This document shows positions 20,314 through 64,000 of a DNA stretch of 64,000 nt, piece by piece; the stretch's first letter is position 1, and each line of letters opens with the position of its first letter. A program made the translations under genes and the position numbers. Under the pieces are notes generated by a model. It saw only the letters and a program-made list of their open reading frames with translations, was not told the DNA's origin and did not search any database. The stretch comes from Macrostomum lignano. Lineage: Eukaryota. The stretch covers positions 15,777 to 79,776 of the forward strand of contig NIVC01002877.1 in the NCBI GenBank assembly GCA_002269645.1, given 5' to 3'.

Positions 20314-21182
20314 CGGCGTCCCCGGTGCACTTGGTCGAGTATGTGCGACGCCTGGCTAAGCGCGGCGTGGCACCCGGTAGCCTCGGTGGACACCTGGCAG
20401 CCATCAGCTGGAGCTTCAAGCTGGCGCAACTCCCCGACATCACCAAGTCCGGCCTGATCGATCTGGCAGTTAAGAGCGCCAAACTGACAAGCGGCCATTC
20501 AGTCAAGCAGAAAGACCCCATCACCCCGGCTGTTCTGCTTTCACTGGCAAACCAGGTGAACCCAAGAGACCCTGCAGACGCCGCCTTTTGGGCCGCCGTG
20601 CTCTGCTGCTTCTGGGCGCTTCTCAGGAAAGCAAATGTCTGCGGGCGCCACTCCATTCTCGTCGGCGACACTCAGGCCGATAGTCAGTGCTGGAGACTCC
20701 GAGTTCGACAGTCGAAGACCAACCAATGCGGACAAGACTACCAGGAGGCGGTGCTGCCAGCGCTCGGAAGCCACCCACTATGCCCTGTCCAAGCCCTGCG
20801 GCGGCATTTTCAGACTAACAAGCTGCGGTCTGCGCCGGCGCTCACTCGGCTGTTTTGCGTCCACATCGCCGGAAGCTGGTGCCCGATGTCATCGCGTCAA
20901 TTCGACCGCCGCCTCGCTCGGGCTCTGACAGATGCGGGTTGGGCGGCGACAGCTTTCTCAGGCCACTCTCTACGACGGGGTGGCGCCTGTCTGGCGTTCG
21001 ACAGCGGCCTCGACGTGGAGCAGATCAAGCGGCTGGGCGGCTGGCGCAGCGGCGCCGTTTCACGCTACCTGCCGCAGTCGGGAGGTTGCCTCCGTCTCCT
21101 GCGCCCAATGGTCAACCGTGTGCTGTCGGCACCTCCTAGCGCTCGCCTGACTCGCCCCGTCGCCGTGTACCCTACTTTTTAA
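20170..21182 (+). CDS. Ngaro ORF3: tyrosine recombinase (no upstream ATG; predicted spliced to ORF1)
   Basis: The frame is open from 20109. It reads WAPSTRASYAS, then catalytic R (LLRKANV), K (SKTNQ), HxxR (GHSLRRGG), W (GGWRS) and Y (SRYL). The first in-frame ATG is at 20886, inside the catalytic domain. Confidence 0.93.
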
Positions 21183-45969: not shown

Positions 45970-47472
45970 GTGGCGACAGCAAAAGTTCACGAGCTCATGC
46001 TTTGAGCTCAGCATCCGAGAGGCCGAGTCACCAGTGAGCTGCATGTGAGCGGGAAGATGAAACGCCTGCAGCTGGATCCCAGACTCGAGGCACAGGAGGA
46101 CCACCGTCTGGTAGATTCGAATAAGCGATGGATGCCTGCAGGACAGCTTTTCGGATTAGACCACCACCCGGCTGTTGAGATGCTCGTGGAAGCGCAGGAT
46201 GTTGAGGAGCGGAGCCAGGGCCTCCTTGTAGTTGATGTGGAGGTCTTTGAATTCTGACTCGAAGTCGTGCTCCCAGCTGAAGTACGCCCAGTCGTTGAAG
46301 CGGGTGCCGCTTACGATGCCAGCGGCGCCCTCGGAGCTGCTGTCGGACTCGATGGTTACCAATTGGTGAAAGCACGGGTGCAGCGGCGTAGGTGGCAGCG
46401 AATCCACTGCCTGCAGCCACCATTGCAGCAGATCGCGAGCTTCTTGAGGCAGCCGGAGATCTCGACCGTCGCTGATGAGGTCAAAAAGCGGGCGAAGAGA
46501 CGGATGCAGCAGCTTGTTGATCTAGCCCAACCAGCACAGCTTCCCGGCCAGCCTCTCCAGCTGCTTGAGCTTGACAATCTCACGGGAGAGGCAGTCCTTC
46601 AGCAAATCCCTGGTGCTGGCGGCCTTGTCCATGGGTAGCGACAGCGTGCAGTCAATTGTGTCGATTTGAACGCTGAGGAAGACCATCTGCTGTGTTGGGG
46701 CCGTGGACTTGCTCCAGTTGATGGTGAAGCCCAGGTCTTGCAGGAGGTGCACCAGGTAGTCGTAAGCGCATTCAGCTGCTTCCTGTGAGTCGCCGGCAAC
46801 CGCCCAGTCGTCCAGGTAGTTGACCGTAGCTTGGAAGCCTTGCCTAAGCATGTGGCGATAAATGGCGGCTGAGAGACGGTGAAAGATCTCGCAAGAGGCC
46901 GAGCACCGAATGGCAGCCGGGAGTCGACGAGCACCGATGATTCGGTGTCAGCTGCGAAACGCCAGCTGAGGCCCGTCAACGCCTGATCGTCCGGGTGGAT
47001 GCCGACAGAGCGGTAGGCCTGCTTCAGATCGACCTTGCCGATAAACGAGCCGGGCCGGATGTGACGCAGCAGATCCTGCACGGAGGAGAATCTCAGACTC
47101 CGCCCCTGCTCATAGCTGTCGTTGACCGAAGAGCCGGAAGGACTGGACAGATCGTGAATGATCCGAACACTGCCGTCAGACTTAGGGATCGCGCCGATAG
47201 CGTTCACTATGACGCGTCCGCTAGCGTTCACTATGACGCGTCCGCTAGCGGGTTTTAAGCGGCCAAGGCGGCCGGAGCTCTTCAGAGAGTTGCTTGTCCA
47301 CCTGCTCGGCATGGTCAGTAGCAGAACGGTAGTTGGCAGAATTCGTGAAGGCAGGCGGAGGTTTGTTCATGAGGCGGAAGCCGTTATGAAGGCCTTTTCG
47401 GAGGAATCTCTCGTCTGGGTCGTTGCGTAGCAAAAGATTCCAAGAAGCCAGGTTCATGTCAGAAGACAGCAC
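45970..47472 (-). pseudogene. Frameshifted RT-RNase H of second Ngaro
   Basis: AIGAIPKSDGSVRIIHDLS, KVDLKQAYRSV, LPFG, YLDD, IESDSS and HINYKE are spread over several frames. A 24-bp tandem duplication lies at ~47197-47245. Confidence 0.88.
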
Positions 47473-47979
47473 CCTATGCGGCGGGGGAGGCGGGTCGGGT
47501 TGGCGGGCAGGGGTGATAGGTAATCATTGCTTAGTTAAATATTATTTTATAGATAGGCCTAAACAAATAATTAATAAACCATAGGGGCATAGGCCTTAGT
47601 CAAATAATTATATTTATATAAATTTGTCTAATATTACTTTTATTAGAAAGTTAACTAGGCTAACAAATAAAAAAATCTATACTTAAAAATAAATAGACCT
47701 ATAGAATATAATATTGATGCATTATTTTTAAAATGGTATGATATAAAAATAATACAGCTTCTTATAGCCCATTTGGGCTTATAAACATTGAATTTAATAA
47801 AATGTTGCTGTTTCAGCCTTGTTACCATAGACAAAAGCCCTATTATATTGGCAAATATATCTTCAATTAAATTCAATATGTATAAAATCAAATGGGCTAC
47901 AAAAAGCAATGAATAAATTATTTTCTTTACTCATATTTTTCAGAAACTACTAGGCCCTATTTAATAACAGCCTAACCAA

Positions 47980-49123
47980 ATGGCCATACTTGGATTAGTT
48001 CTATCTGCTATAGCCAGTAATGTGCTTGGCAGTCTATGGTATTCTCCTATGCTGTTTGGCACAACTTGGTGCTTGCTAGTGCACAAATGCCAGCCATGCC
48101 AACTGAAGCTCAGCACCAGCTCTGCTGTCACTATCTATGGCCTGACCACAGCTGGCAATCTAACTACTCTAGTACTGTTGCGCCTGGCCATTAGCCAGTT
48201 TGTGGCCAATTGGCAGCAACTGTTCTGTCTGGCCAGTGCTGCTTTTGCTCTGATTGTTGGTAATCAGGTATGCTCTATCTGCTTAAAAGTAATCTCCATA
48301 GAGCGCAAAATAGAATCAGTGTCAGAGGGTGCCATAGTGGAGCAATTGGTGCCAAGCAGAATCAGTGTCAGAGGGTGCCATAGTGGAGCACTTGGCGCCA
48401 AACAGAATCGGTGTCAGAGGGTGCCATACTGGAGCACTTGGCGCCAAGCAGAATCAGTGTCAGAGGGTGTCATACTGGAGCACTTGGCGCCAAACAGAAT
48501 CGGTGTCAGAGGGTGCCATACTGGAGCACTTGGCGCCAAGCAGAATCAGTGTCAGAGGGTGCCATACTGGAGCACTTGGCGCCAAGCAGAATCAGTGTCA
48601 GAGGGTGCCATACTGGAGCACTTGGCGCCAAACAGAATCAGTGTCAGAGGGTGTCATACTGGAGCAATTGGCGCCAAGCAGAATCAGTGTCAGAGGGTGC
48701 CATACTGGAGCAATTGGCGCCAAGCAGAATCAGTGTCAGAGGGTGCCATACTGGAGCAATTGGCGCCAAGCAGAATCAGTGTCAGAGGGTGCCATACTGG
48801 AGCACTTGGCGCCAAGCAGAATCAGTGTCAGAGGGTGCCATACTGGAGCAATTGGCGCCAAGCAGAATCAGTGTCAGAGGGTGCCATACTGGAGCAATTG
48901 GCGCCAAGCAGAATCAGTGTCGAGAGCGCCATACTTGGGCAAACATAACTAGTTGCTTATCAACCAGGCGTTACCTGAGAAAGCGCCTTTCCCGCTCCAA
49001 TCCTTGCAGCTGCCGCACTATCTGTTCCAGAGCAGTCCGCTGCCGCTCTACTGGATCAACTTCGGGTACGATGCGGCTGTCATTTTTATTGGCTGCGTCC
49101 TTATGTTTGCTGTGCCTATCTGA
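47980..49123 (+). CDS. DUF1761-like small multi-pass membrane protein (133 aa); join(47980..48267, 49010..49123)
   Basis: Exon 1 has IASNVLGSLWYSPMLFGTTW and ends CAG|GTATGC (phase 0). Exon 2 after TCCTTGCAG| reads LPHYLFQSSPLPLYWINFGYDAAVIFIGCVLMFAVPI*. Both ends match my recollection of the DUF1761 pattern (LWYSxxLFGxxW ... F....L..IN.GY). Confidence 0.7.
48312..48921. repeat. 46-bp minisatellite, ~13 copies, intronic
   Basis: Unit GCAGAATCAGTGTCAGAGGGTGCCATACTGGAGCA(C/A)TTGGCGCCAA. Confidence 0.95.
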
Positions 49124-49628
49124 ACTAAGCCAACATTTTCGATTTTCCCTAAAACTCTTGCAATAAGATTAATCAATTTTTTTTTTAATTCAGTTTGTTC
49201 TCTTAATATTTGTTACTCGCTACTCAATTAACAGCCGTTGTATCAGTAGTAGTTTAGGGATATATATCCCAGTTTTATCTATCGGTGCTAGTATTTTTAT
49301 TTGTAAGTTTTATTATTATTTATCTGTCTTCTGGCAAAAACTCATCCAAATTCAAAGCATTTCTCTCTGTTGCAAATAGAAATTTTACTCTCAGTCCGAG
49401 AGCAAAGCCAAAAAGCCTTTTGTTGCAGTTCTATTTTGTGCATCAACATTTTAAGCAACTTGATTGAAAAAAGTAAAAAAATTGTGTTGGTGCCAGTTTT
49501 TTTACATTTTTCGACAGCTCCATGTAGAACTAATTGTAGAGCACGTCTACGGCTAGTCTACTTCCAAAATAGGCCTGTTGTCTGTCGTAGTTGGCTACTC
49601 TGGTAGCTGACAATGCAATTTTAGGAGA

Positions 49629-50133
<505 letters not shown>

Positions 50134-50266
50134 CTATCGAGGCCTACCGCGGCGCCTCCGGTCTGGTCAAAGCAATTCAGCAGGTGCAAATCTTGAATGC
50201 TGAAACGGACCCCCGCTGCGCGTGACAGGCCCTGACGCACTGCCCGATTGAAAATCGGGGGCCCCA

Positions 50267-50800
50267 TCGGCACTGACTGCCGACGGATCGGCACTGGTCT
50301 GTCGGCACTCAGAGTGTCCGGTAAAGTGGCTCATATCGGCACCGACGGTCGGTACTGTCGGTACTGAACATCGGCACTCGCCGTCGGCACTGACCTAGAG
50401 CCTTCGCCGCACCCTCGCCCATTCGCCGTCGGCACTCATGTCGACACTCCCGTCGGCACTCATGTCGGCACTCCCATCGGCACTCCCATCGGCACTCATG
50501 TCGGCACTCCCGTCGGCACTCCCGTCGGCACTCCCGTCGGCACTCATGTCGGCACTCCCGTCGGCACTCACATCGGCACTCATCGACACTCCCGTCGGCA
50601 CTCCCGTCGGCACTCAAATCGGCACTCATCGACACTCCCGTCGGCACTAAATCGGCACTCATATCGGCACTCAAATCGGCACTCATCGATACTCCCATCG
50701 GCACTAAATCGGCACCCCTGTCGGCACGTAGGCCCGTAGGCCCGTATATCGGTACTCCATCGGCACTCATGTCAACCCTCATATCGGTACTCACATTGGC
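50267..50800. repeat. Left subterminal repeat array (GTCGGCACTCCC-like 12-mers)
   Basis: Dozens of (G/A)TCG(G/A)CACT(C/A) motifs, mostly at 12-bp spacing. Confidence 0.9.
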
Positions 50801-51823
50801 ACTCATTGGCCCTCGTGTCGGCTCCCATATATCGGAGGCATTTTGTGTCGTGAATCAATGGAATAGTTAATTACGTTATTAGTGTAATGGCAAAATTATA
50901 TTAAAATAAAATTAGACCTGTGGACGTGAGACAGCAATTTAACTCCAGCATCACTGAATCACCGTACACGTACCACGTACATGTATCCCCTATCGAGCAT
51001 GCGTTCCATAAAGAAGTGGCAGGTAATGCAGGAAATATGGACAGAACAGTGTAATTGTCACATAGATGGTGGCCAAAAGTAGATACATGTATAAATATTA
51101 CCCATTTATTTGGATGACTAGCCTTGTAAAGGCTCGACAGTTGACCGAGGCGAAAGCAGAAGGGAATTGGTGCCAATCGACAACTGTTGCGTGGGGATGG
51201 TAGGCAACGAATTATTCACGTATAAAAATAAACAAATAATAAAACAGAAACTGAACCCTGCAGAGAGACTCGGATTTTGGGCACACGTACGCGTGCTATG
51301 TGTTCTGTTAAAAGGAAATGACACACAATTTAATAAAATGCTGCCCCTTCGTTTGCTACTACAACTACTACTTCTACTACTACAGCTAGCGTCTACCTAC
51401 TTCTGGAAGTAACTGGACCTACGTTATACTTTGCTACTTATATTACTAATCACTTATAGCGGGACCTCCAAATACCATCCGACTCCCATAAATGTCTGAG
51501 GTGGGGTGGGGTTTGAGGTGAATGCTCGCATCGGAAATGTAAGCGGGTCTTTGGTGGTCATTACGGTATAAGCAGGTGCAAACTAATGCTCAAAACTTAA
51601 AACTTAAAACTTAAACGTAAAAGCTTAAAACTAACTTCTTAGCTATAATGCTATACGCATTTAGAGTAATGCTAGAAGAGTAAGGAAACTAAGGCTATAT
51701 AATACTTTTTTCTTCAAGGGTCTATCAATGGCATCGTGGACGTTACGTGGTCCCCCAACTGTGCTAGGAATTATGCTTCAATACTTTAATTAAACATACA
51801 ATCCCCGCGTCCTAGACCCCGAC

Positions 51824-54030
51824 TTAGGCCCCTAGATCGCTGTCGCCCTTGTCGCCGTCGACATGGGCCGTGTCGCTGCTGGGGCCAGTGCCGCTGCCGT
51901 TGCCAGTGCCGCTGCTGGGGCCACTGCCGCTGCTGGGGCCAGTGCCGCTGCCGTTGCCAGTGCCGCTGCCCTTGCCAGTGCCGCTGCTGGGGCCAGTGCC
52001 GCTGCCGTTGCCAGTGCCGTTGCTGGGGCCAGTGCCGCTGCCGTTGCCAGTGCCGCTGCTGGGGCCAGTGCCGCTGCCGTTGCCAGTGCCGCTGCTGGGG
52101 CCAGTGCCGCTGCCATTGCCAGTGCCGCTGCTGGGGCCAGTGCCGCTGCCGTTGCCAGTGCCGCTGCCGTTGCCAGTGCCGCGGCCGTGGCCGGTGCCGC
52201 TGCGATGGCTAGAGGCCGGCCGGCTGCTATCGCTCTTATGTTTTTTGCTGTTGTGGGTGCCGTGGCCAAAAGCCGACTTTGAATGACGGCTGTCGTCCTC
52301 ATCAACACCATCGGGCCTGCTGCGCTTGCTGCTCTTCCGGATGGAAGCGCCGTCCCCGCTGGTGGGCGCCTCCTTGTCGGTCCGCCTTCGCTTCTGATGC
52401 TGGCTGGCACTGCCGGCGTCAGCATCAGCCTGATCATCAGCAGTTCCGGTGGCAGCGGTGGGGTTCTGATCGTCAGGCCTGCTGTTGGCCTTGTTAGCGG
52501 ATTCGCGTTTGGTCTTGTTCCTGCATGCGGTGGGCGTGGAAGATTAGGAAATGGAAAGTGCATCTAATTAACTACATATCGACAAGCATTCCAGGAATCC
52601 TTTATTCCCAATCATATGGCATACTGTTGTTTAAGCAGTATATAAGGCACGTAGTGCACTATTACAGTATTATATTACCGTAGTTATGCAGCCCATATAA
52701 CCATTGCCACTGCTACCCTTTGTACTAGTGCTACCACTTTTATGATAGAACACCGTATTCCTTACCGCAAGGTGACCTCCTTCACTGCGCCGAAAGCACG
52801 CCCCAGCAGGCAGGTTCCACTGCTGGGGTCCGTAGTCGGAACTTTGACGTCGCTTAGGAAGGCAATAATGGCCTCCCTTTTGGCCTCAGGGATGGGCGGC
52901 AGGTTTCTTCCGCCGTCCCACTGGCGACCGGTGAAGGAGCAATTCAGCTGCTCCTCCTCCGTGAAAACTTCACGACAGAGAAGGCGCAGAAGCGCCTTCT
53001 GGCTCGTCTGCGTTTTTTGCCTATGGAACGCTGCTACGGTGCTGCGCATCGGGCCGAAGAAACTGTGCCTAACAAAGACAGCCGGGTGAGACCCTACTAG
53101 CGGTACCAACTCATCATCCGAGTTCCTCGCCGTCTGGGATGCTTCGTCCAGCCTTGGGAGCGCACACCGCATGCTAGCCGCGACCGTCGATCGCAGTGCG
53201 CCACTCAAGCTTCCAAGCCGCGAATCCGCGGGCGCCGTGGCACTGGCCGTGACGTCTACCATGTCCCCGCCTCCCACAGAGGCCATGGATGGCATCTGAA
53301 GTGTGTGATCTGCGATCTTCATACCACACGACTCATCACTGGACGCGATTGCTGCAGCTGTCTGCTCCATGAGCTCCTGTTGAGCACTTCCCAGGCAAAC
53401 AGCCGTCTTGTGCATGGCCTGCAGCAGCGTCTGCTGTATCGCCGTCACCGCTTTGAGCTGATCTGCCGATCGACGCCAGCGCTCGTAGAAGACGTCATGA
53501 GCACCTTGCTGTTCAGCGTCCCCCAGCTGTTCCAGCTCCTTCTTCGCCACGTCCAGCTCCGAACGCAGTTTTTCCACCTTTCGCTCCAGGTCCTCCACCA
53601 CAGCACTGTGGACCTCCCGCTGGGACTCTTGCAGGTCCTGCATCTGGCGGAGACGCGTCTTCAGGGTGCCAACCTCCTGCCGGTAGCTGGCGCACATGCT
53701 GCAACCGTCGTCCGGGAGGTCAACAGCGCCACTGGCCACCAGGAACTTCTTCCGGAATTTCCCAAGCTCCTTTAGGGCTGTATTCCGTGGACCAGCAATT
53801 GGTCCGTGTACCAGTTCGACAGCTTGCGCCTTGCTTCGCTGGCTAGTACGGGCCTCTACGTGCTGCCCTTCCGCATAGGGGCCGCTGCCTGACGTACCTT
53901 CGGCCTTGATGTACTCCTCAGAGAACAGGTCGTTTTCGCCGGCGCTGCGTCCGGCGAGAATCTTGCCAACCCAGTAGCGTGGAAATTGTTGGTCATTAGT
54001 CGTCGTACGCTTGCGTCTGGCGTTCAGCAT
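51824..54030 (-). CDS. Coiled-coil + BEN-domain protein with Gly/Ser-rich tail (~653 aa); join(54030..52766, 52520..51824)
   Basis: Coiled coil (LKTRLRQMQDLQ...LEQL) and BEN-like LLRLLCREVFTEEEQLNCSFTGR...LPPIPEAKREAIIAF. The donor CG|GTAAGG and acceptor CATGCAG|G are both phase 2. Exon 2 reads NKTKRES...(GTGNGS/GTGPSS)n...DSDLGA*. Confidence 0.75.
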
Positions 54031-54150
54031 TTTCTATGGGCGTAACTTGCAGACGCTTGTTCTAATCAACGCTGCTTCGAAAAGTGGTGGTCCGGGTGCT
54101 GGAAAATCGGATATTGAGGCGTCACTTGTAGATTCATGCCTGTCAGTAAG

Positions 54151-54292
54151 CAGTGTTGGGCACTAACTAGTTAAATAGTTTACTAGTTATTAACGAAGTT
54201 AGTGTTTCACTAACTTTTAGCAGTTTTCCGTTACTTAATTTCTTTTCAACGAACCTAATGCCCCCCTTAAAAAATTGCTGGCTGCGCCACTG

Positions 54293-54342
<50 letters not shown>

Positions 54343-54635
54343 CCTCTCTATCTCTCTCTCTCTCTCGCTCTCTCCCACTGTCTCTCTCTGTCTTGGTCTC
54401 TCCCGAAATTGGGCCATTGGCACAAAAAGTAACAGAGGAGAGGATGCGGAGAGGAAAAATGAACTAAGTACTTTGTATTACTACAGTAATATGCGGAAAG
54501 TTAACTTTTTAACTTAAGTCACTTTTTTCTGAAAAGTTAAAAAGTTATCCAAGTTAAGTTACTTTTTTTGCCAGTTAAAGTTAACTGTTTAACTTTTAAC
54601 GAAGTTACTTTTCCAATTAACTTTGCCCAACACTG
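54151..54635. mobile_element. hAT-family MITE nested in the CACTA element
   Basis: 12-bp TIR CAGTGTTGGGCA/TGCCCAACACTG. Perfect 8-bp TSD TCAGTAAG at 54143-54150 and 54636-54643. Contains a (TC)n tract. Confidence 0.9.
54293..54390. repeat. (TC)n microsatellite
   Basis: Seen directly. Confidence 0.95.
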
Positions 54636-55372
54636 TCAGTAAGTAGGTATGCACATTATATTAAGTTGTGTATAGCTGCTGCTAATATTAATAATATTTT
54701 AAGACTTTTGAGCATATCATTTAGGAGAACATATAATAAGACTTGCCTATACTATGGCTTATATTAAGAGTACATAATAAGACACCTGCCTATACGCAAT
54801 AAACGTTCTCGACCGCATGTATTACCTACATACCTGGAAAGGTTGTAAGTACCCTAAAACAAAAGTGTAATAAGTACACCCCGATTGAAATTTCTTAGTG
54901 GGTACCTGTAGTAGTACGTCTGTGGGCGGCTTTCGCCACTCCCCTCGATCAGCGCTATTTTAGAGTCTGTCAGCGTATTGAACCCGTGATGTAAGTTGCG
55001 AAAAACGTAATTACAGTTTTTTTTATTTACATCGGTTGTCATTCGCAGATTACATGTCGCCACTTGTTACCTAATATACAGTAACGTACATTCAGATCTA
55101 CGCTATTACACGTCATCATGCCCTCCACTACTACACGCCTTATGCTGCACCAAATGACCCCATGTAGCTGTGGAAGACATATGGAAGACATGGAAAAGAT
55201 AATGGACAACACGAAACGGAAGCAGAAATATGTGAGCTGTCCCTCAGCCGTGCGACCGCTCTCGCCCTTTCATGTCATACGAACGTTTATGTGGAAATGC
55301 ATTTGTGGAAGTACACCGCATGTGCTGTAGTACGCACTAGGCGAGACGCCAAAACTTCGGTTTTTAGTAAAG

Positions 55373-55746
55373 TGCAGTAAATGCATCGTAGCACGATATT
55401 TATATGCAGTTCATCGAGGGCACTGTAAATAGGGGGAAGGAGATCGGTACATCCATTACACTACTGTCTTAAATGCTGCGTCGAAATGCGACAGATGTAT
55501 AGCTGTGCAAGATAAGACGTGCGTGGGAGACATGGAAACAAGAAAGGATGACCGGTATGTCAAAAGTAATATATATGGAGAAAAACTGGCACTGTTGCTG
55601 TGCGCACGTGGCAGGACGCCAAAACCGCACTGTCATACTGTACAGTAAATGCATAAATGCAAGGTAGCACGATATTTATATGCAGTTCATCGAGGGCACT
55701 GTAAATAGGGGGAAGGAGATCGGTACATCCATTACACTACTGTCTT
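55373..55746. repeat. ~95-bp direct repeat pair downstream of the F-box gene
   Basis: GCACGATATTTATATGCAGTTCATCGAGGGCACTGTAAATAGGGGGAAGGAGATCGGTACATCCATTACACTACTGTCT at ~55391 and ~55669. Confidence 0.9.
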
Positions 55747-55764
55747 ATGCTCACGTCATCACTG

Positions 55765-57944
55765 TCACCGCCCCATATTGGCTAGCTCCGGCAAATCAAT
55801 GCGCAGATGAATGTCACGATTTTTGTTCACGACGGCAGCGGCGTGGTGCCACATTTCAATGTTACTCGTGGGCAGTTCCGTCCAACGGATGTAAACTTCC
55901 AACAGGCTCGGGCATTCCCTGGCCAGCAGCGTCAGACAGTCCGGCGTAACGGCGGTGCCATCGAGCCACAGCCAGTTAAGGCTGGTCGCGACGGAACAGG
56001 TGCACAGACGCGATAGACTGCCATCGTCGAGGCTGGGGCAGTTTGCGAGCGTCAGTTCGAGCATTGCAGCAGAGGCGTGGTCGGCTGGACGAATACCTGC
56101 AGGAGGGAGAGTCTCCCAGGCTTTGCCCGTCACCAGCCGACAGTCCAACAAGTGCAGGCACTGCAGCTGTGGCAGCGTGAGTAACAGACAGGCCACGAGA
56201 CTGTCGTCGCAGGCGGGCCACGAGATAGTCACGTGAGTCAGGCCTGCGTACGGATGGAGAAGTGTACATAGTAGCGTCCAGTGTGCAGTGTGTAGGTCTA
56301 GAGCGGAGGCGTGCGCACCATACAGGATGAACATGCATGCCTCATAAAGACTAAGACTAACGTCACGTGCATGCACATTTGTGCGTCAAATGTAATATGC
56401 ACCACACTCACCACGACATCCGCCGAGAGCGGTCGCGAATGCAGGCTCACCGACCCTGATCCCGCAAGCTTCGTCGGTGGGCGTGACGTAAAGCTGCAGC
56501 ACTCGTAGCGACGGAGGTAGCCGAGTGCCACGGAAAACGTCGGCAGACCCGGCTGGCGCGTCCGGACTGGCAGCTATCTGGTATCTCAGCCGCGTCAAGT
56601 CGGGCAGCTCCTGGCAGGCCAACCGGAAGCCCTCCGCGCCCAGACTGAGGCAGTGGACGAGGCTTAGGCTTTGGAGCCCAGGCCAGCACTTCAGCAGTTG
56701 CCGCAGGCCCCACACGGTCAGCTTGTCGCCTGCGTCCAGATGCAGGTGACGCAGGTTGGCGCCCTTGAGGCCGACTCGTGCAGCAATTTGACCGGCGATG
56801 GCATCCGTGACGACCTGGCTGTGCACGGTCAAGCGCTGTAGCTGGTCTCCCTGCCCGCTGATGATGTCGAGCAGCACTGAGAGATAAGGAAGGGTGCATT
56901 TCGTCGTTAAAACGCATTCATTATTTAGAAAGAAATTAATGGTTGCACACAATTCCCGGAGAAGGCCTATACGTAATTACTAAGCCCACTACGAAGTGAC
57001 TATTTTTAAATGGATTGTAACAACATGCCTCGTGTAGCCCTGGCCGGAGACGGGGATGCCGGCGGGTCTAGGGTGACCTCACGCAGCCGGGTGAAGCGGC
57101 ACCAGCCTGTAGCGATGGCCGCTGCTACGGGACCAGCTGAAGTGGCAAGCATGTCTGCGCGGACATGCAACACCTGTAGGAATGCCGGAGAAGGGGGGGG
57201 TGAAGTTAATAATATTAATACATAGACAGCCATCTCGACTAAAAGGACTGTGCCATGTGACATGAGAACGTATGTGACATGGGTCATATGACCTTACTGT
57301 TTGAGCAATTATACATGCCGTATTACCTGTATGCGGCCCAGCAGTCGGCAAAAGGGTGCAGCGCACTGTGCGACGTCGCCACCAAAGATTTCCTCGCCGT
57401 CTGTCAACAGCTCCAGCTTCTCCAGTCTGGGACAACCGTCGCTCAGACTGGCCAGCGCCTCCGGGTTGAAGATGCCTGGGCATTCTGCCAATGATAGCTC
57501 CCGCAGTTGTAGGCAACTGCGACCAGCCACCGTGAGGAGGTTTGGGCCGCCGGTGTACTGGCCCATGTCCAGCAGGCGGAGCGTACGCAGCTCGCCGCAG
57601 CGCAGAAGGAGCGTGGCAGCGCGGTCGATGGCGATCGCGCTAGGCGGCTCGAACACGGTGCCCAAATCTAACTCTTTCGCCGCCGTCGCCAAGGTCATGA
57701 GCCGTGCCGCTGTGCTGTAGTCGTCCAGTGCAGTGGCGGTGACAGGCAGTCTCTCCCACAACACTGGTGCGCGGACGACGTCTGCCCAACGGCGGCATAC
57801 TTGTGCGCACACCAGCCGAGTGGGTACCGTGAGGTGCTGCAACACCTGCATGAGCAACTCCGACGGCAGCACGTCAATGGTAGGTGGGGCACGGCCGGTC
57901 GATGACTGCATCGCTCGGCAGTTCGGCGGAGCTGTAATCCACAT
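55765..57944 (-). CDS. F-box/leucine-rich-repeat protein (~555 aa); join(57944..57327, 57173..57029, 56876..56451, 56243..55765)
   Basis: F-box IDVLPSELLMQVLQHLTVPTRLVCAQVCRRWADV and FBXL-type LRRs (LRELSLAECPG, LQSLSLVHC, LQCLHLLDCRLVT, LLARECPSL). Intron phases 0/1/1 all match. Total 1668 nt is divisible by 3. Intron 2 needs a GC donor. The alternative start is 57911. Confidence 0.82.
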
Positions 57945-58842
57945 GCGAGGGACGGGGTTCAAATAAACTTGATTACTGTATTAATGCAGTACTGCAGTAA
58001 TGGATTAATGCAGTACCGTAAGTTGTACGGTAGGTTCATGTGCAGTTCAGCTTTTGTTGTTGCTTTTAGGGAGAAGTCGTACGAGAAAATGGAGCAATTC
58101 CTGTACTAATTTGTAGTAGTAGTAGTTGTTGTTGTTTCTGCACAATATGTTTTACACTATATTCGAAGACATGCAAAACATGGACAGCTGCCGTATACCG
58201 TGCAAGAGAAACAAGGAATAGGAAGTTCCGTGAAGTCGTTTCAATTCTTAAAATAACGAGACGTGCAGCAGGTGAAGTAGAGTGAACAGCGGTTGGGAGC
58301 GGTGTATTTAACAGACAGTACAAGAATAGTATAAGTAACCCAAACAAAAGTTTACAGACAGTAATATTACGTAATAGTATAGGCACTTATGCACTACATA
58401 CAGCACATCGCTATATACACAATAATAACATTCTTATACTAGCTGCAGTATTCATGCCACACTATATACAACGTTGTTATATGCTAACAATATTCTTTCC
58501 TTCGAAATGCAATCTAGCCAGCAGGCCTAAAGCAGACAAAAACCAAAGCTAAGCCCCTGCACACAGGCCTACAGTGGACAGATTATGAACAGTTAATGAC
58601 TTTTCCTTTTCCCTTGTCTCTTTCATGGCCTTCCCCGTACTTCCAGATGTCACAATGCAACAAGTCAAACAAAAGCATTAAGAAGAGACAGCAGAGAGGC
58701 CGACAGCAGAAGCAGGTGATGACAGTAGTCGTCCGGAAGGCAGTTGTGGTGGCCTGGGGTCTGGCGGGACGGCTCCCCGGGCTACCCCTGCTTTGGAGGA
58801 GCTCCAACTCCTACCCGCAACCCCTGACTGCTCTTTATCTCT

Positions 58843-58843
58843 T

Positions 58844-58905
<62 letters not shown>
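58843..58905. repeat. (CT)n microsatellite
   Basis: Seen directly. Confidence 0.95.
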
Positions 58906-58907
<2 letters not shown>

Positions 58908-59551
58908 TCTTCATCCCAAGACCCAGCCGCTCTTCCCCAGACCCAGACCCGGCCACTACGGCCCCAAGACCCAAGACCCAGCCCCCATGCCTGCTGAGGC
59001 CTGTTCTAGTGCGTTACTCACTGTTGGACTTGAGGGGGCCGAGACCCCATAAATATACTAGCCTTGGGAGCCTTCGCTCCCCAAGGTTCGTCTCTCTCTG
59101 TTTGTGCCCATGCATCGGGAAGCCATTTCCCCTCTGGCGATACTGCCTTAGAATCCTACCGTGTTCCGACTTCATACACAAGTCATGAAAGCAGTCCTGC
59201 AGAACGATGGGCGCATAGGCAATCAGCCATATTTCGGATTCGTGCCCACGGAACTTCTTCAGCTCGCGCAGTGTGCGCGTTCCACGCAGTTCAACGCTAC
59301 GGAATCCGCCCTGCAGGGCAGATTCAGACCCAAGAATCTGCCCTGCACAGCAGATTCCTTTTAGGCAGAAAAAATTCAATGGAATCCGCGACGAGGTGTA
59401 CACACTGATCTACACACTTGTCCTCGTCGGAGTAAATGTGAGAATACGGGATGGACAGAAGTCGGGCTGCGGACAGTCGGAGACACTAGACATGGATTGC
59501 AGTTGTCTGACACACTTGTTCGGCAAATCTTCGGCACTTGCCGCCCGCCCA

Positions 59552-62500
59552 CTAGGCGGCGAAGGAGGTTTGCACGTGCGGGAGGAAAGCTATGTGGGTG
59601 TCAGTTACACAGCATGTGCCAAGCACGTCCACCACGGGGAGACAGAAGTGCATGCCGCCGATGTCGCCGAATGGGTTGTCGACGACGCGCTGAATGTGCC
59701 TCAGTCGGCAGCCGTCGTTCTGTGCGACGCCCGAGATGTAGTATTCCGGGTCCAGAAGGCAGACGGTACGAAGGCGACGCACCATCAGGATTGCAGTCCC
59801 GCGGGTGGGGGACCTGCGGATGGCGTCGACGCGACCGAAAGCCAGTTGGACACCGTCGTCACTGGCGGCGAAGGCGACGAAGCAGCACAGGGACCGCTGG
59901 TGCTGTAGCGCGGGCAAGTAGCGCTCAATGCGCCATCCGTTGGTCAACAGAGCCCAGCGGAACTCGTCGTCATGTAGCTTGGTGTACACCCTGGTCCCGT
60001 CGGCCATGGTCTCTTGGACACCCTGAAGGAATCCACGGGCCGCAAAGGGCGAGGCCAGGCCCAACTGGTGCATGACGGCACGCCTGCTGAATTGCCGTCT
60101 GATGGCAGAGTGCACCTGAGTGAAATGAAGGGTGGGAGGCGCCCGTTGCAAGTTAGGTAACGGTCTGATGCAGCAACGCAAGCCCTCGGAGGGGAACATG
60201 GTATCAAGGGGGAACCTTTGTAATTATATATACCACGATAACCCAGGGGGTGGGTTTCTAGTGCGATACAAGAGTGGGCATCCTGCATACGTACTGACTA
60301 CTAGTGAGTAGAATATAGAGGCGTAGATGCCATTATACTATATTTTTCTAATTAGAGAAAAGGGTCTCTCTGCGTACCTGATCACCGACGAACCTGGCGC
60401 CCTTGACGCGCGTTTTGAGGCCGTAGTGCAGAGACTCGAACAGGCCGGCGGAGGTGCGCCACACGGGTCCGAAGAGAAAGGCTGCGGGAACGAGGTGCTC
60501 ACAGACCTGGTGGGCATTGTAGGTCATGGCGGCCGGCGAAAACCCATCCTTCAGGCTGGCGTAGAATACTCGCAGGGTCTTCGCTGCACGAGTAACTTCC
60601 GTCAGCGGGCAGTTCTCCAGAGACAGCCAGAAGATGGAAGAGGACAGGAGCAGCAGTTGATTGTAATAGAACGGTCCCAGCGTGTCGCCGAGAACCATGG
60701 GCCGTACACCAACAGCCAGCACTCAAATTCGTGCCCGCGGAAGTGGCCGAGGTCCGCCAGGGTGCGAGGGCCCGCTGGTGCGACGCAGGCACTCGAATAC
60801 TGGCCGCCTTGGCGTCCACTTCAGCCACATGGCGGGACAAGTCCGGGTTCTCGGCCATCTTGTCAGGTCGCTTGCCGACGGGCAGAAAGTGCTGCCGCAG
60901 CAGCCAACCGACAACGCCGACGAGGCACTGATGGAGGTAGCAGGGCGGGCAGGAGGTGATGAAGTCGAAGCCCTGCAGCCGATGAAGAGGAGACAGCCTG
61001 ACGACGCCGAGGTTGTGGCCTGCGCCCGCCGGAATCGTGGTCGCCAGGAGGATGGTGTCCTGCAATGCCCGTACCGCGGCCGTGTGCAACCGGCGTCGGA
61101 TGCTGCTTGCAGCGCGTCGGCCGAAAGCTCGCATGGGAAAATGCGCGCATTTCCTCCGCGGTCGGCATCATGGAGAGTCACGGTGTAACAGTGATCGCAG
61201 CCGTACACTGCTGAGCAGTGCTGTAACCCAGTCACCTCAACCCTCTGAGGCGCGTCAAGCACGAAGAGGAGCGGATGGAAGCGGATGCAGCCGCCACGCG
61301 TGCCGTCTCGTCCACCACCTGTGCGGAACATAACACCCTCGATGCGAAGGCTGTTCAGCTGGGCCACCAGCCACGGCAGGAAGGCGTCCACGCTCACCTT
61401 GTTCCTGCAGGCCCACAGAGCGCAGACCACCGTGAAGCGCGCTCGCATGTGGTCGGGGACCTCATTCACGGTAAGGTACACGGGGCAGATGTTGTACACC
61501 GCCCGGCTGAACACGGAAAATGCATCGATGTTGACCGTGACCGTCAGATCTGAGCGAGCGGCCTTGTCAATGAGGTGCGTAAAGGCCGAGTATGCCGTGC
61601 TTTGCCACAAGCTCAGACCACCCGGCCGCCGCGTGACGTCCGCGGGGAAGGAGACGACCGACAACAGGCCGCAGCGCTCAATGAGCTGCCGTAGCTGGGC
61701 TCGCACATCCATCCGCCAGACCTTGGCGACGCGGTCCACTGACGAAAACTGCTTTCCGCAGGGTTCGCAGGTCAGTGGAAGGGCCTCCTCCACCAGGGGC
61801 CGGCTGCACCTAGGACAAAAAAGAAGTCGTTCGGAGCGCAGGGAGTTGCAGGACTCCAGAAACCGTCGCAGGCGGTACGGGTTGTCGGCAAACACGGCGT
61901 CTGGGGGAAGCGCGAGCTTCGTGTAAAGCAGCAGGTCCGCCGTGGCGTTTCGCGACAACTTGTGCTTCTCGGCTAGGAGCTCTCCGTACACTGCCAAAGT
62001 GGCGTATGACAGGTGCGGCATTGTGCGATGCACCGGTTGCAGAAACCCTGGCGCGATGTGAACGACGCGCGTCGTCGCCGCCATGGGCTGCCCCTTCGTC
62101 GACAGCACCGCTAGCACCGCCAGCCCCGTCGCCAGCACCGCCAGCCCCGTCGCCAGCACCGCCATCACCGTTGACACTGTCAGCGGATTCCTCGATGACG
62201 TCGTCCCATAGCGCACCCTGGCGGATGGAAGAGAAAGGGTAGGAAGGGGAGGAAGGAGGGAATCATAACTAGATTGGTTCTAGGCAGCCGATGAACATTG
62301 CGTGCTTAAGTTTGCTGAGTGCTAACTGATATTTGCAGGCAGGATCACATCAGCCACGTATACGCACGAGTGCCAGCCTTCAACAGTACAATGCAAGCCT
62401 TACGTCATCACCGTCATCATCAGACGTCGCATCGCTGGGGTCAGGACTGCGGTCGGATCCGCGGCCAGAGGCTCCATCGGAGCTGCGGTCAGACCCACGT

Positions 62501-63111
62501 TCGGAGTCGCAGTCGGATCCGCGGCCAGAGGCTCCATCGGAGCTGCGGTCAGACCCACGTTCGGAGCGCAGTCGGATCCGCGGCCAGAGGCTCCATCGGA
62601 GCTGCGGTCAGACCCACGTTCGGAGCCGCAGTCGGATCCGCGGCCAGGGCTCTATCGGAGCTGCGGTCAGACCCACGTTCGGAGCCGCAGTCGGATCCGC
62701 GGCCAGGGGCTCTATCGGAGCTGCGGTCAGACCCACGTTCGGAGCCGCAGTCGGATCCGCGGCCAGAGGCTCCATCGGAGCTGCGGTCAGACCCACGTTC
62801 GGAGCCGCAGTCGGATCCGCAGCCAGGGCTCTATCGGAGCTGCGGTCAGACCCACGTTCGGAGCCGCGGTCGGAACTGCAGTCAGAGCTAGAGCTGAAAA
62901 GCTCAGCAGGACCGTCAGATGAGGCAACACCACCGGCATCGTCCTCGTCATGGTTAGCTGCACCTTGCATCGAACTAGATGCTGCGGCTTGGCCAAACTG
63001 CAGCACACGCATGCACTTACTTGCAGCTGCAGCTGCACGCCGATCGGACCGACAGACTGCCTCCAGCTTTCTCTTACGGTCGCGCGCTTTGATATTTTTG
63101 GCAAAGTCCAT
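59552..63111 (-). pseudogene. CACTA/EnSpm-type transposase, frameshifted as assembled; exons 63111..62404, 62217..60378, 60115..59552
   Basis: Acidic N-terminus and a zinc finger (CPRC...CEPC). Motifs TVNIDAF (D), PVYLTVNEVP, LDAPQR (D), GCDHC (C2C), GVVRLSPL..LQGFDF, YLH, MTYNAHQVCEH (H-rich) and GPVWRTSAGLFES (E). Both introns are phase 0. Frameshifts lie in the 60-bp repeat and at ~62050, ~61140 and ~60760. Confidence 0.88.
62441..62873 (-). repeat. 60-bp coding tandem repeat (SDGASGRGSDCGSERGSDRS) in transposase exon 1
   Basis: About 7 units, three of them with single-base deletions. Confidence 0.85.
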
Positions 63112-63397
63112 TGCCACGAAGACTTTTGGCAGCTGGCTGAAATGCGCTAGAGGATATGCGCATGGGAGACATGTCAGATGGTATTGCGAAACTACAGCTT
63201 TAAAAAATATCCATGTTGTTGGATTGTCTTTCAAGTTGTCTAAAGCCATACGTATCATCAATACATGCTCTATGCCCCATGCTCCTATGCTCTAGATCTA
63301 TACATGCCATTAGAACACCCTTTCTACTGAGACAGTCCCAGTCCCGTTCAGGACCCAAGTGTATGATGTAAAAGCTGTATTGCATAAGTCTTACTGT

Positions 63398-63535
63398 CAA
63401 AGTCTCACAAAGTCCTACGAAGAGTCACACAAAGTCCTACAAAGTCTCACAAAGTCCTACAAAGAGTCTCACAAAGTCCTACAAAGAGTCTCACAAAGTC
63501 CTACAAAGAGTCACACAAAGTCCTACAAGGGGCTA
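63398..63535. repeat. Degenerate (CACAAAGTCCTACAAAGAGTCT)-type repeat
   Basis: Seen directly. Confidence 0.8.
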
Positions 63536-63857
63536 CAAAATCCTACAAACAGAACTACCACAAAGTCGTACAAACTGTTACAAAGTCATGTCGGTAGTAG
63601 CCTTTGCTCACAACCTGAATTCATGGCAATATCTGCTACATCTCTGTACGACTTCTATCCGCCAATGCCGTATAACGTTTGCAACAAAATCAATGAAGGG
63701 TCGCTATGAATCGAAACGTCGCATATTGAAGCGTGGGCTTTGTTGGATACTTTAGCCAATGCAGTTCCTGATTTATTTTGTGTGGGACACTTTGCCAAAA
63801 TAGCATGAAATTAGACGCATAGAAAATTAAGAGAACATGGGGACAGATAAAGACATA

Positions 63858-64000
63858 TCGACAGTGCCGACGGGTAGTGCCGACGAGCAGTGCCGACGGG
63901 TAGTGCCGACATGTCGGCACTACTGGGCAGTGCCGACGGGCAGTGCCGACGGGTAGTGCCGACATGTCGGCCTACTGGCAGTGCCGACGAGTGCCGACGG
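63858..64000. repeat. Right subterminal repeat array (inverted relative to 50267-50800)
   Basis: Repeated AGTGCCGACGGG is the reverse complement of CCCGTCGGCACT. Confidence 0.88.

What the first reader, a model, noticed from the sequence alone, without database searches (positions are those of the whole stretch)
50238..64000. Giant CACTA/EnSpm transposon carrying a three-gene cassette (transposase, F-box/LRR, BEN protein)
Seen: a CACTG-starting candidate terminus, mirrored subterminal arrays >13 kb apart, and three co-oriented intron-containing genes between them. Established: CACTA elements encode a DDE transposase plus a second DNA-binding protein and can capture genes. Inference: a multi-component selfish system with a cutter, a subterminal-repeat binder or regulator (BEN) and a ubiquitin-ligase adaptor. 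To my knowledge this combination is not a standard description for animal CACTA elements.
Basis: partly seen in the sequence, partly recalled or inferred. Interest (0 to 1): 0.85.

Follow-up and report, generated by a model that had tools for sequence, protein, structure and literature searches.

The report
Young three-gene DNA transposon in flatworm
This is one copy of a very young, probably still mobile, 13.9-kb cut-and-paste transposon of the flatworm Macrostomum lignano that carries, besides its transposase, a conserved second gene and an unusual F-box/LRR ubiquitin-ligase adaptor gene.

Summary
The window is Macrostomum lignano contig NIVC01002877.1. Window 50243 to about 64086 is one copy of a 13.9-kb DNA transposon, and the last ~86 bp fall in an assembly gap.

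Six copies at five unrelated loci are 99.2-99.8% identical. All carry the same three co-oriented, intron-containing genes.

- **Ends:** complete copies end in a 14-bp inverted repeat, CCCGATTGAAAATC, flanked by 3-bp target-site duplications (ATC, CAG, TTA). It is not the terminus.
- **Transposase:** it belongs to the CACTA/Mirage/Chapaev (CMC) group. 33 of 50 homologues hit Pfam tnp2, and the D, D, CxxC, Hx4H, E signature is conserved. It is intact in sister copies. The window copy has seven private 1-bp indels next to the gap, probably assembly errors.
- **Third gene:** it has counterparts beside related transposases in four other families, so it is an ancestral accessory gene, not a captured host gene. 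UniProt calls it BEN, but Pfam, PDB and AlphaFold2 did not confirm this here.
- **F-box/LRR gene:** it is FBXL-like and found only in this family.

Verdict: a new variant of a known kind, of moderate interest.

The parts
50240..50242 (.). Left target-site duplication (CTG).
   Evidence: Homology with the five other copies ends at 50243. Complete copies have 3-bp duplications: ATC/ATC, CAG/CAG, TTA/TTA.
50243..64000 (-). One copy of the transposon, with its genes on the - strand. By comparison with sister copies it continues about 86 bp past the window end, into an assembly gap.
   Evidence: 99.64% identity over 13757 bp to L001. L003 is the window's own record, 100% identical, with N from 64001. 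Flanks of the different loci are unrelated.
50243..50256 (+). Left terminal inverted repeat, CCCGATTGAAAATC (14 bp).
   Evidence: The same 14 bases, inverted, end L001, L002, L004, L005 and L006. Related families end CCCGCTGAAAAAATC (L008) and CCCGCTGGGAAAAA (L011).
50257..50820 (+). Left subterminal array, about 45 degenerate copies of (G)TCGGCACT, mostly in 12-bp register.
   Evidence: TRF finds period 12, 22 copies, at 50427-50685.
51824..54030 (-). ORF2, the 'BEN' gene. Exon 1 is 54030-52766 and exon 2 is 52520-51824. The protein has an N-terminal YWV domain, a CxxC plus coiled coil, a C-terminal 'LLRLLCREVFTEEEQLNCSFTGR' domain, basic NLS-like stretches and a GTGNGSGTGPSS repeat tail.
   Evidence: 100% identical to UniProt A0A1I8JMC4, 'BEN domain-containing protein'. 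Splice sites. A profile of the ORF2s of L007, L008 and L009 ranks this ORF first of 334 ORFs, E=4.9e-7. No Pfam BEN hit.
54151..54632 (.). Nested hAT-like miniature element inside the transposon: 12-bp TIR CAGTGTTGGGCA and 8-bp duplication TCAGTAAG. It carries a (TC)n run.
   Evidence: Read from the sequence. Direct repeat D8 at 54140 and 54633. (TC)n at 54294-54393.
55765..57944 (-). F-box/LRR gene with four exons: 57944-57327, 57173-57029, 56876-56412 and 56243-55765. It encodes an F-box followed by about 15 LxxLxL repeats.
   Evidence: Pfam F-box-like E=4e-13. PDB sequence hits FBXL2 and SKP2, E about 3e-5. AlphaFold2 model (pLDDT 65.8) best matches FBXL2 and FBXL17 by Foldseek, E=1e-9. Exons 1-3 equal the annotated protein P0005. 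Repeat spacing. Exon 4 is my own model.
59014..59403 (-). Short relic resembling part of a related transposase (..RTLRELKKFRGHESEIWLIAYAPIVL..), in the spacer downstream of the transposase gene.
   Evidence: Read from the three-frame translation. Not tested further.
59552..63111 (-). Transposase gene with three exons: 63111-62404, 62217-60378 and 60115-59552. Catalytic D codon 61526-61524, D codon 61256-61254, CxxC within 61205-61185, Hx4H within 60521-60492, E codon 60437-60435. Zinc-ribbon CxxC..CxxC within 61817-61749. The window copy has seven private 1-bp indels: 62828, 62649, 62567, 62069, 61071, 60773, 60701.
   Evidence: 95% identical to P0001. 3105 homologues. 33 of 50 hit Pfam tnp2. 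Invariant residues. Indels. Exons 1-2 read through in L004, and exon 3 is identical in all copies. Coordinates.
63863..64000 (-). Right subterminal array (AGTGCCGAC, 13-bp register), cut off by the end of the window.
   Evidence: The full array and right TIR are seen in L001, L002, L004, L005 and L006.

Best explanation
Window 50243-64000 is one copy of an autonomous cut-and-paste DNA transposon of Macrostomum lignano, about 13.85 kb long. It belongs to the CMC (CACTA/EnSpm-Mirage-Chapaev) group, in a lineage whose ends start CCCG rather than CAC.

Shown:
- Six nearly identical copies sit at five unrelated loci.
- The ends are 14-bp inverted repeats, with 3-bp target-site duplications.
- Oppositely oriented arrays of the 9-mer GTCGGCACT lie just inside both ends.
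- The transposase has the CMC catalytic signature and is intact in sister copies.
- All copies hold the same three genes.

Inferred mechanism:
- The transposase cuts at the CCCG ends and reinserts with a 3-bp staggered cut.
- The subterminal 9-mers are multiple binding sites that bring the ends together, as in maize En/Spm.
- The binder is either ORF2 (the 'BEN' protein) or the transposase's own N-terminal zinc ribbon. ORF2 accompanies the transposase in at least five families, so it is probably required.
- The F-box/LRR gene is a later acquisition of this one family. It sits between the transposase and ORF2.
- I think the F-box protein most likely works as an SCF ubiquitin-ligase substrate receptor expressed from the element. 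Whether it helps the element, for example by removing a host repressor or tuning transposase or ORF2 levels, or merely rides along, is open.
- The near absence of substitutions between copies means the burst is very recent and the family may still be active.
For: Identity and copies:
- P0001 is 95% identical.
- L003 is the window itself at 100%.
- Copies L001-L006 are 99.2-99.8% identical over the whole element.
- Flanks are unrelated, except L004 and L006, which share one locus.

Ends:
- TIRs and TSDs ATC, CAG and TTA.
- Related families end in similar CCCG termini.
- Repeat arrays.

Transposase:
- 3105 homologues.
- 33 of 50 hit PF02992 tnp2 and 19 hit DUF1258.
- Conserved D376, D466, C485-x2-C488, H715-x4-H720, E740. 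This is the CMC signature described in PMC12730594.
- Intact in L004.

ORF2:
- Conserved next to the transposase in L007, L008, L009 and L011.
- L007 vs L008 E=2e-16. Window ORF2 vs L007 E=0.003. Profile E=4.9e-7, ranked first of 334 ORFs.

F-box:
-.
- No F-box similarity in L007, L008 or L011. The spacer between transposase and ORF2 is at most about 1.1 kb in L007, L008, L009 and L011.
- No other homologue at E<=1e-3 in the 5.8-billion-protein search, so no recent host parent is visible.

Youth:
- In about 8 kb of exons the window copy has no private substitutions. Copies differ almost only by 1-bp indels.
- Two loci, the window and L001, share a 362-bp deletion, so the deleted form itself spread.
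Against: - No excision, empty site or transcript was examined, so activity is inferred from sequence identity alone.
- The transposase itself does not hit Pfam tnp2. Membership rests on its homologues and on motifs.
- The termini are CCC...GGG, not the CAC...GTG usual for EnSpm and Chapaev.
- One copy, L001, has non-matching flanks (CAG/TCA).
- The window copy's right end is unreadable, and its transposase frame is broken by seven 1-bp indels as assembled.
- Copies are too alike to show selection on the F-box or ORF2 genes.
- DNA binding by ORF2 is not shown, and its BEN identity was not reproduced here.
- ORF2 homology between the window family and the others is weak (18-24% identity).
Confidence: 0.8

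Rival explanations
1. The F-box/LRR gene is a passive passenger. It is a gene picked up once by this family that has no effect on transposition or on the host's control of the element.
For: It is absent from the four related families, where the transposase is followed directly by ORF2. It has three introns like an ordinary cellular gene. The copies are so young that its intactness says nothing about selection.
Against: No close host parent or paralogue was found in a database that holds the M. lignano proteomes. This argues against a recent capture of a conserved host gene. The gene is complete, from the F-box to the last repeat, and co-oriented with the other two genes. The deletions seen in L002 spare it.
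Confidence: 0.45
2. The window copy itself is a dead, non-autonomous copy. Its transposase is truly frameshifted, and it can move only with transposase from sister copies.
For: There are seven 1-bp indels private to this copy, all in the transposase gene. As assembled, the reading frame is broken several times.
Against: All seven lie within 3.3 kb of a 3.5-kb assembly gap. There are no private substitutions. Indel-only differences are what long-read consensus errors look like, which rests on my own knowledge. The F-box and ORF2 exons of this copy carry none.
Confidence: 0.3
3. It is a canonical CACTA element whose true ends are CACTG...CAGTG.
For: The window reads CACTG immediately before the shared sequence. 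Three of the observed duplications are CAG/CTG, which gives ...CTG|CCCG at several ends.
Against: The five bases before CCCG differ at every locus, and the last three of them are repeated on the other side of the element. Related families also begin CCCG.
Confidence: 0.02
4. It is a segmentally duplicated host gene cluster rather than a mobile element.
For: M. lignano has a recently duplicated genome, which rests on my own knowledge. L004 and L006 are such a duplicated locus, with flanks 97% identical.
Against: Homology stops at the same two bases at five loci with unrelated flanks. These boundaries are inverted repeats bracketed by 3-bp duplications. One gene is a DDE transposase.
Confidence: 0.01

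Closest known systems
Maize En/Spm and plant CACTA elements
   Same: Transposase of the tnp2 / CMC type. 3-bp target-site duplication. Short TIRs followed by arrays of a short subterminal motif in opposite orientation at the two ends. Size of 8-20 kb. A second element-encoded protein besides the transposase (TnpA in En/Spm, per PMC1636069 and my own knowledge).
   Different: The ends are CCCG...CGGG, not CACTA...TAGTG. The genes are separate transcription units rather than alternative splice forms of one. ORF2 has no detectable similarity to TnpA. There is an extra F-box/LRR gene. The host is an animal.
SmTRC1 and other animal 'TRC' elements (Schistosoma, Aedes, Tribolium; DeMarco et al. 2006, PMC1636069)
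   Same: Animal, including flatworm, CACTA relatives whose TIRs start with CCC. Transposase_21-type transposase. Tandem repeats inside the element.
   Different: TRCs were reported with 2-bp duplications and sizes of 4.5-9 kb. SmTRC1 has a 54-bp TIR and one gene with alternative splicing. Here the duplication is 3 bp, the TIR is 14 bp, the element is 13.9 kb and there are three genes.
Chapaev and Mirage (the other CMC lineages)
   Same: The D, D, CxxC, HxxxxH, E transposase signature. Chapaev makes 3-4-bp duplications (PMC4079192). Many homologues of this transposase also hit DUF1258, a C. elegans family.
   Different: Chapaev has invariable CAC...GTG termini (PMC4079192). Mirage makes 2-bp duplications (my own knowledge). 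No phylogeny with reference sequences could be built here.
Fungal EnSpm/Plavaka/KDZ transposons that carry a TET/JBP dioxygenase gene (PMC12730594)
   Same: Autonomous DNA transposons of the same broad clade that carry a complete extra gene. That gene could act on the host's control of the element.
   Different: The cargo here is a ubiquitin-ligase adaptor, not a DNA-demethylating enzyme. The host kingdom is different.
F-box proteins of viruses and other parasites that hijack host SCF ligases (for example polerovirus P0; my own knowledge, not tested)
   Same: A selfish genetic element encodes an F-box substrate receptor.
   Different: No target, no Skp1 binding and no effect on silencing has been shown for this protein. 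The analogy is only a lead.

Membership tests
CMC (CACTA/EnSpm-Mirage-Chapaev) DNA transposons | DDE transposase homologous to the tnp2 / Transposase_21 family | tested here: met
   The protein itself has no Pfam hit. Of 50 homologues found at E about 1e-138 to 1e-25, 33 hit PF02992, 19 hit DUF1258 and 2 hit Plavaka. The test is met by transitive homology only.
CMC (CACTA/EnSpm-Mirage-Chapaev) DNA transposons | [quoted passage not shown] | tested here: met
   D466, C485-x2-C488, H715-x4-H720 and E740 are invariant in a 50-sequence alignment. D376 is nearly invariant.
CMC (CACTA/EnSpm-Mirage-Chapaev) DNA transposons | Target-site duplication of 2-5 bp (3 bp for EnSpm) | tested here: met
   ATC/ATC, CAG/CAG and TTA/TTA at three complete copies. 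The fourth base does not match. One copy is discordant.
CACTA/EnSpm in the strict sense, and Chapaev | Termini 5'-CAC(TA/TG)...GTG-3' (PMC12730594, PMC4079192) | tested here: not met
   Termini are 5'-CCCGATTG...CAATCGGG-3' in all copies and CCCG in two related families.
CACTA/EnSpm in the strict sense | Subterminal arrays of a short repeated motif, inverted between the two ends | tested here: met
CACTA/EnSpm in the strict sense | A second element-encoded protein that binds the subterminal repeats (TnpA) | not testable with these tools
   A conserved ORF2 exists. Its DNA binding cannot be tested in silico here.
Animal TRC elements (PMC1636069) | TIR starting with CCC | tested here: met
Animal TRC elements (PMC1636069) | 2-bp target-site duplication | tested here: not met
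   The duplication is 3 bp in this family. The single copy of the second M. lignano family, L011, could fit 2 bp (CA/CA), but n=1.
BEN domain proteins (Pfam PF10523) | Significant match to a BEN profile or a BEN fold | tested here: inconclusive
   UniProt names the identical protein and a deletion variant 'BEN domain-containing'. There was no Pfam BEN hit for it or for four homologous ORF2s, even at E<=10. HMMER's speed filters drop most matches above E about 0.1, so a weak hit could be missed. There was no PDB sequence or profile hit. The single-sequence AlphaFold2 model was too poor to search with (pLDDT 39.6). The motif LLRxLFxxEELxxxxxTGR looks BEN-like to me from memory only.
F-box/LRR (FBXL) substrate receptors of SCF ligases | N-terminal F-box | tested here: met
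   PF12937 E=4e-13 and PF00646 E=4e-10, both above the curated cut-offs.
F-box/LRR (FBXL) substrate receptors of SCF ligases | C-terminal leucine-rich-repeat solenoid | tested here: met
   About 15 LxxLxL units at 25-34-residue spacing. The AlphaFold2 model shows alternating strand and helix, pLDDT 65.8. Best Foldseek matches are FBXL2 (E=1e-9), FBXL17, MAX2/D3, TIR1 and SKP2. The model is of moderate quality.
F-box/LRR (FBXL) substrate receptors of SCF ligases | Binds Skp1 and recruits a substrate | not testable with these tools
   Needs an interaction assay.

The most novel reading that the evidence does not exclude
The F-box/LRR protein is a counter-defence gene of the transposon. It would be an SCF substrate receptor that sends a host factor restraining the element to the proteasome, for example a piRNA-pathway or chromatin-silencing protein. 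ORF2 would be the sequence-specific binder of the TCGGCACT arrays. That would make this the first animal DNA transposon known to hijack the host ubiquitin system, in a flatworm where transgenesis and RNAi allow a direct test.
Probability: 0.15. Interest if true: 0.85.

Novelty: new variant of a known kind. Interest (0 to 1): 0.55.

Why it matters
- **Possible tool:** copies this alike (no private substitutions in the window copy's ~8 kb of exons) with an intact transposase point to a DNA transposon that may still be jumping. The host is a regeneration and stem-cell model animal that already has transgenesis. A native, large-cargo element could become a genetic tool and a source of insertional mutations there.
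- **Accessory gene:** the conserved ORF2 shows that a lineage of animal CACTA relatives has a two-protein system like plant En/Spm, but with an unrelated second protein.
- **F-box cargo:** a complete F-box/LRR adaptor inside an autonomous animal transposon is unusual. My literature searches here found no described case. If it acts on host factors, it would extend ubiquitin-ligase hijacking, known from viruses, to transposons.
- **Annotation:** several M. lignano 'hypothetical protein' and 'BEN domain-containing protein' entries are transposon genes.

Tried and rejected
- **Pfam on the transposase and ORF2:** no family hit directly. The transposase was classified through its homologues instead.
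- **BEN tests that gave nothing:**
  - Pfam at E<=10 on the window ORF2 and on the ORF2s of L007, L008, L009 and L011.
  - phmmer and two profiles against PDB.
  - Single-sequence AlphaFold2, pLDDT 39.6, unusable.
- **Self-comparison:** comparing the element with the other 50 kb of the window found no other copy or fragment, and no second TIR.
- **UniProt copies of ORF2 (P0002, P0003):** they are not in the contig index. P0006 and P0010 are not on record either.
- **Window copy's right end:** extending beyond 64000 met 3515 N.
- **L001 and the window as two halves of one locus:** rejected, because the sequence beyond the gap does not match L001's flank.
- **TSDs of related elements:** L008 has AAT/CCT and L011 has CA/CA. 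These are single copies and not informative.
- **En/Spm motif:** I recalled the En/Spm TnpA-binding motif CCGACACTCTTA as resembling TCGACACTCCCG here. The only paper in the library containing that string was an unrelated Klebsiella paper, so I give the resemblance no weight.
- **Whole-element MAFFT alignment:** timed out and was replaced by pairwise BLAST comparisons.
- **Literature searches:** searches for BEN or F-box genes in DNA transposons found no described case. This is absence in that library only. Repbase could not be consulted.

Full report
**What the window is.** A conceptual translation of the - strand ORFs at 59552-62216 is 95% identical to one protein. That protein is a hypothetical protein of Macrostomum lignano, PAA59085.1. 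A locus fetched through the F-box protein, L003, is 100% identical to window 46470-64000. It comes from NIVC01002877.1, assembly GCA_002269645.1. In that record a run of 3515 N starts at the base after window 64000.

**Checking the observation.**
- The mirrored arrays are real. GTCGGCACT occurs 14 times on the + strand at 50301-50648 and 9 times on the - strand at 63863-63998. It occurs nowhere else in 64 kb, against 0.4 expected.
- In a complete sister copy, the core TCGGCAC occurs 29 times forward in the first 540 bp and 15 times reversed in the last ~320 bp. It occurs twice in the 13 kb between.
- The left array is in 12-bp register and the right array in 13-bp register.
- The three - strand genes are also real.
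- The proposed CACTG terminus is not real, as the next section shows.

**The true ends.** Through the annotated transposase and F-box proteins I obtained six loci from the same assembly.
- All hold the same element at 99.2-99.8% identity.
- Homology with the window starts exactly at 50243.
- Every complete copy begins CCCGATTGAAAATC and ends GATTTTCAATCGGG.
- The three bases outside the ends are direct repeats: ATC/ATC in L002, CAG/CAG in L004 and TTA/TTA in L005.
- In the window, the bases before 50243 are ..GCA CTG. CTG is the duplication and CA is flank.
- The flanks of the loci are unrelated. The exception is L004 and L006, which are one insertion in a duplicated or allelic region, with flanks 97% identical. 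That gives five independent loci.
- L001 has discordant flanks (CAG/TCA). There the element interrupts a gag-like ORF. I cannot explain this copy. Recombination between two copies or an assembly join are both possible.
- The element is 13,854 bp in L001. The window copy should end about 86 bp past the window, inside the gap.

**The transposase.**
- Pfam gives nothing for the protein itself.
- A full phmmer scan of 1.8 billion representative proteins finds 3105 homologues.
- Of 50 aligned homologues, 33 match Pfam Transposase_21 (tnp2, the CACTA transposase family), 19 match DUF1258 and 2 match Plavaka.
- The alignment has invariant D466, C485-x2-C488, H715-x4-H720 and E740. D376 is nearly invariant. 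There is also an invariant N-terminal CxxC...CxxC at 280-298.
[quoted passage not shown] That clade makes 2-5-bp duplications and usually has CA..TG termini (PMC12730594).
- Chapaev has invariable CAC...GTG ends (PMC4079192).
- CCC termini have been described for animal CACTA relatives ('TRC' elements of Schistosoma, Aedes and Tribolium), with 2-bp duplications (PMC1636069).
- So this element fits the clade by protein and duplication length. It fits the animal TRC group by its CCC ends, and it differs from TRCs in making 3-bp duplications.

**Is the window copy's transposase broken?**
- As assembled, yes. Compared with all five other copies it has seven private 1-bp indels, at 62828, 62649, 62567, 62069, 61071, 60773 and 60701.
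- In L004 exons 1 and 2 read through without a stop. Exon 3 is identical in all copies.
- The private differences are all indels and all lie within 3.3 kb of the assembly gap. None touches the F-box or ORF2 exons. I therefore think they are consensus errors, but only reads can tell.
- L002 and L005 share another 1-bp deletion, at 61907.
- L001 has two 1-bp deletions in F-box exons.
- Substitutions between copies are nearly absent, so the family expanded very recently.
- The window and L001 share a 362-bp deletion in a spacer relative to L004, L005 and L006. So a structural variant has itself reached two loci.

**The third gene (ORF2, 'BEN').**
- The spliced product is 100% identical to UniProt A0A1I8JMC4, named 'BEN domain-containing protein'.
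- I could not reproduce the BEN assignment. There was no Pfam BEN hit even at E<=10, although HMMER's filters drop most matches above about 0.1. There was no PDB hit, and the AlphaFold2 model was unusable.
- The more informative result came from relatives of the transposase.
- Three metagenome contigs carry transposases 34-37% identical to this one: L007, L008 (Tara Oceans) and L009. Each has a co-oriented downstream gene with the same layout.
- That layout is an N-terminal Y/F-W-V/I-V domain, a CxxC followed by a coiled coil, a C-terminal domain with the motif L(L/R)xLxRx(L/I)FxxEExxxxxxTGR, and often a repeat tail.
- L007 vs L008 gives E=2e-16, and the window protein vs L007 gives E=0.003.
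- A profile of the three metagenomic proteins ranks the window ORF first among 334 ORFs (E=4.9e-7). It ranks an ORF beside a second M. lignano transposase family, L011, second (E=0.0014).
- ORF2 is therefore an ancestral partner of this transposase lineage, not captured cargo.
- L008 and L011 are complete elements of about 9.9 and 8.0 kb. Their termini are CCCGCTGAAAAAATC and CCCGCTGGGAAAAA, similar to this element's CCCGATTGAAAATC. L008 has its own subterminal repeats.

**The F-box/LRR gene.**
- The F-box is clear (PF12937, E=4e-13).
- The protein aligns to FBXL2 and SKP2 in PDB.
- It has about 15 LxxLxL units.
- A single-sequence AlphaFold2 model of moderate quality (pLDDT 65.8) is a strand-helix solenoid. 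Its best structural matches are FBXL2, FBXL17 and plant F-box LRR receptors.
- Exons 1-3 equal the annotated partial protein P0005. Exon 4 is my own model. One intron would be GC-AG.
- None of the four related families has an F-box gene, and their spacers are too short for one. So it was acquired by this family.
- The word-indexed search of 5.8 billion proteins, which includes the M. lignano proteomes, found only the element's own copies at E<=1e-3. No recent host parent is visible.

**How it most likely works.**
- Shown: the anatomy, the multiplicity of copies, the duplications, and the family of the transposase.
- Inferred: the transposase cuts at the CCCG ends and integrates with a 3-bp stagger.
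- Inferred: the dense, oppositely oriented 9-mer arrays are protein-binding sites that assemble the two ends, as in En/Spm.
- Inferred: ORF2, being conserved with the transposase and carrying basic NLS-like stretches, is the best candidate binder. The transposase zinc ribbon is the alternative.
- Inferred: the F-box/LRR protein is an SCF substrate receptor made by the element. Whether it serves the element or is a passenger is about an even bet on present evidence.

**Comparison and novelty.**
- This is a CACTA-type system in the broad sense, with non-canonical CCC ends already noted in animals.
- Three things appear new: the family itself, the recognition of a conserved ORF2 in this animal lineage, and a complete FBXL-type gene as cargo.
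- I could not consult Repbase, and my literature searches cover open-access papers only.
- I rate it a new variant of a known kind, with interest 0.55. It is solid and useful for a model organism, and it offers a testable and possibly striking role for the F-box gene. The basic nature of the element is not surprising.

Noticed in passing
window 54151-54632: A miniature hAT-like element is nested in the spacer between the F-box and ORF2 genes. It has a 12-bp perfect TIR (CAGTGTTGGGCA / TGCCCAACACTG), an 8-bp duplication (TCAGTAAG) and a (TC)n run inside.
   Followed up: partly
window 59014-59403 (- strand): A short relic (..RTLRELKKFRGHESEIWLIAYAPIVL..) resembles residues about 628-655 of the transposase but is clearly diverged. 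It is probably a fragment of a related element lying just downstream of the transposase gene.
   Followed up: no
window ~59391; L004 8204-8565; L002: There are structural variants between copies. A 362-bp segment is present in L004, L005 and L006 and absent in the window and L001. L002 lacks window-equivalent 58384-59391 and 54509-55291. All of these lie in spacers, and no gene is touched.
   Followed up: partly
L001 9050-9052 and 22907-22909: This copy has non-matching flanking triplets (CAG vs TCA). Its downstream flank is a gag-like ORF cut at ..DRFMQGV (Retrotrans_gag E=0.004, below the Pfam cut-off). This is unexplained: it could be recombination between copies, a flank deletion or an assembly join.
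   Followed up: partly
L005 (NIVC01001499.1:105387-126861): This copy lies inside a gene for a Cys-loop ligand-gated channel (Neur_chan_LBD / Neur_chan_memb), on the opposite strand and presumably in an intron.
   Followed up: no
L011 6478-14475 (NIVC01001997.1): A second M. lignano family of the same lineage. It is about 8.0 kb, with TIR CCCGCTGGGAAAAA, a transposase 33% identical to this one and an ORF2-like gene, but no F-box gene. Its flanks are ..ACCA / CAGT...
   Followed up: partly
L008 97-10043 (Tara Oceans metagenome contig): A complete related element of about 9.9 kb from an unknown marine eukaryote. It has a 33-bp TIR starting CCCGCTGAAAAAATC, CCGG-rich subterminal repeats on both sides, a transposase and a two-exon ORF2.
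   Followed up: partly
window 62452-62874, 51866-52203, 63398-63587: There are tandem repeats inside the element. 60-bp units encode an acidic and serine-rich stretch of the transposase N-terminus, and their number varies between copies. 18- and 36-bp units encode the GTGNGSGTGPSS tail of ORF2. 22-bp units lie upstream of the transposase gene.
   Followed up: no
window 17489-21182 (+): A DIRS-like retroelement with three consecutive ORFs: one with a SAP domain, a reverse transcriptase and a phage-integrase-type tyrosine recombinase. Another ORF, at 44895-45968 (-), has a tyrosine-recombinase N-terminal (Phage_int_SAM_4) domain.
   Followed up: no
window 7435-11679 (-), 35164-36480 (+): Two apparent host genes. 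One is a 1414-aa ORF with a MACPF domain and ten ephrin-receptor-like cysteine-rich repeats. The other is a rhodopsin-family GPCR.
   Followed up: no
window 48303-48942 and 49843-50079 (-): Just left of the insertion there is a 46-bp-period tandem array (seen as staggered self-matches). There is also a short ORF (..[23 protein letters not shown]..) that looks like the C-terminal end of a non-LTR retrotransposon ORF2. This was read from the sequence only.
   Followed up: no
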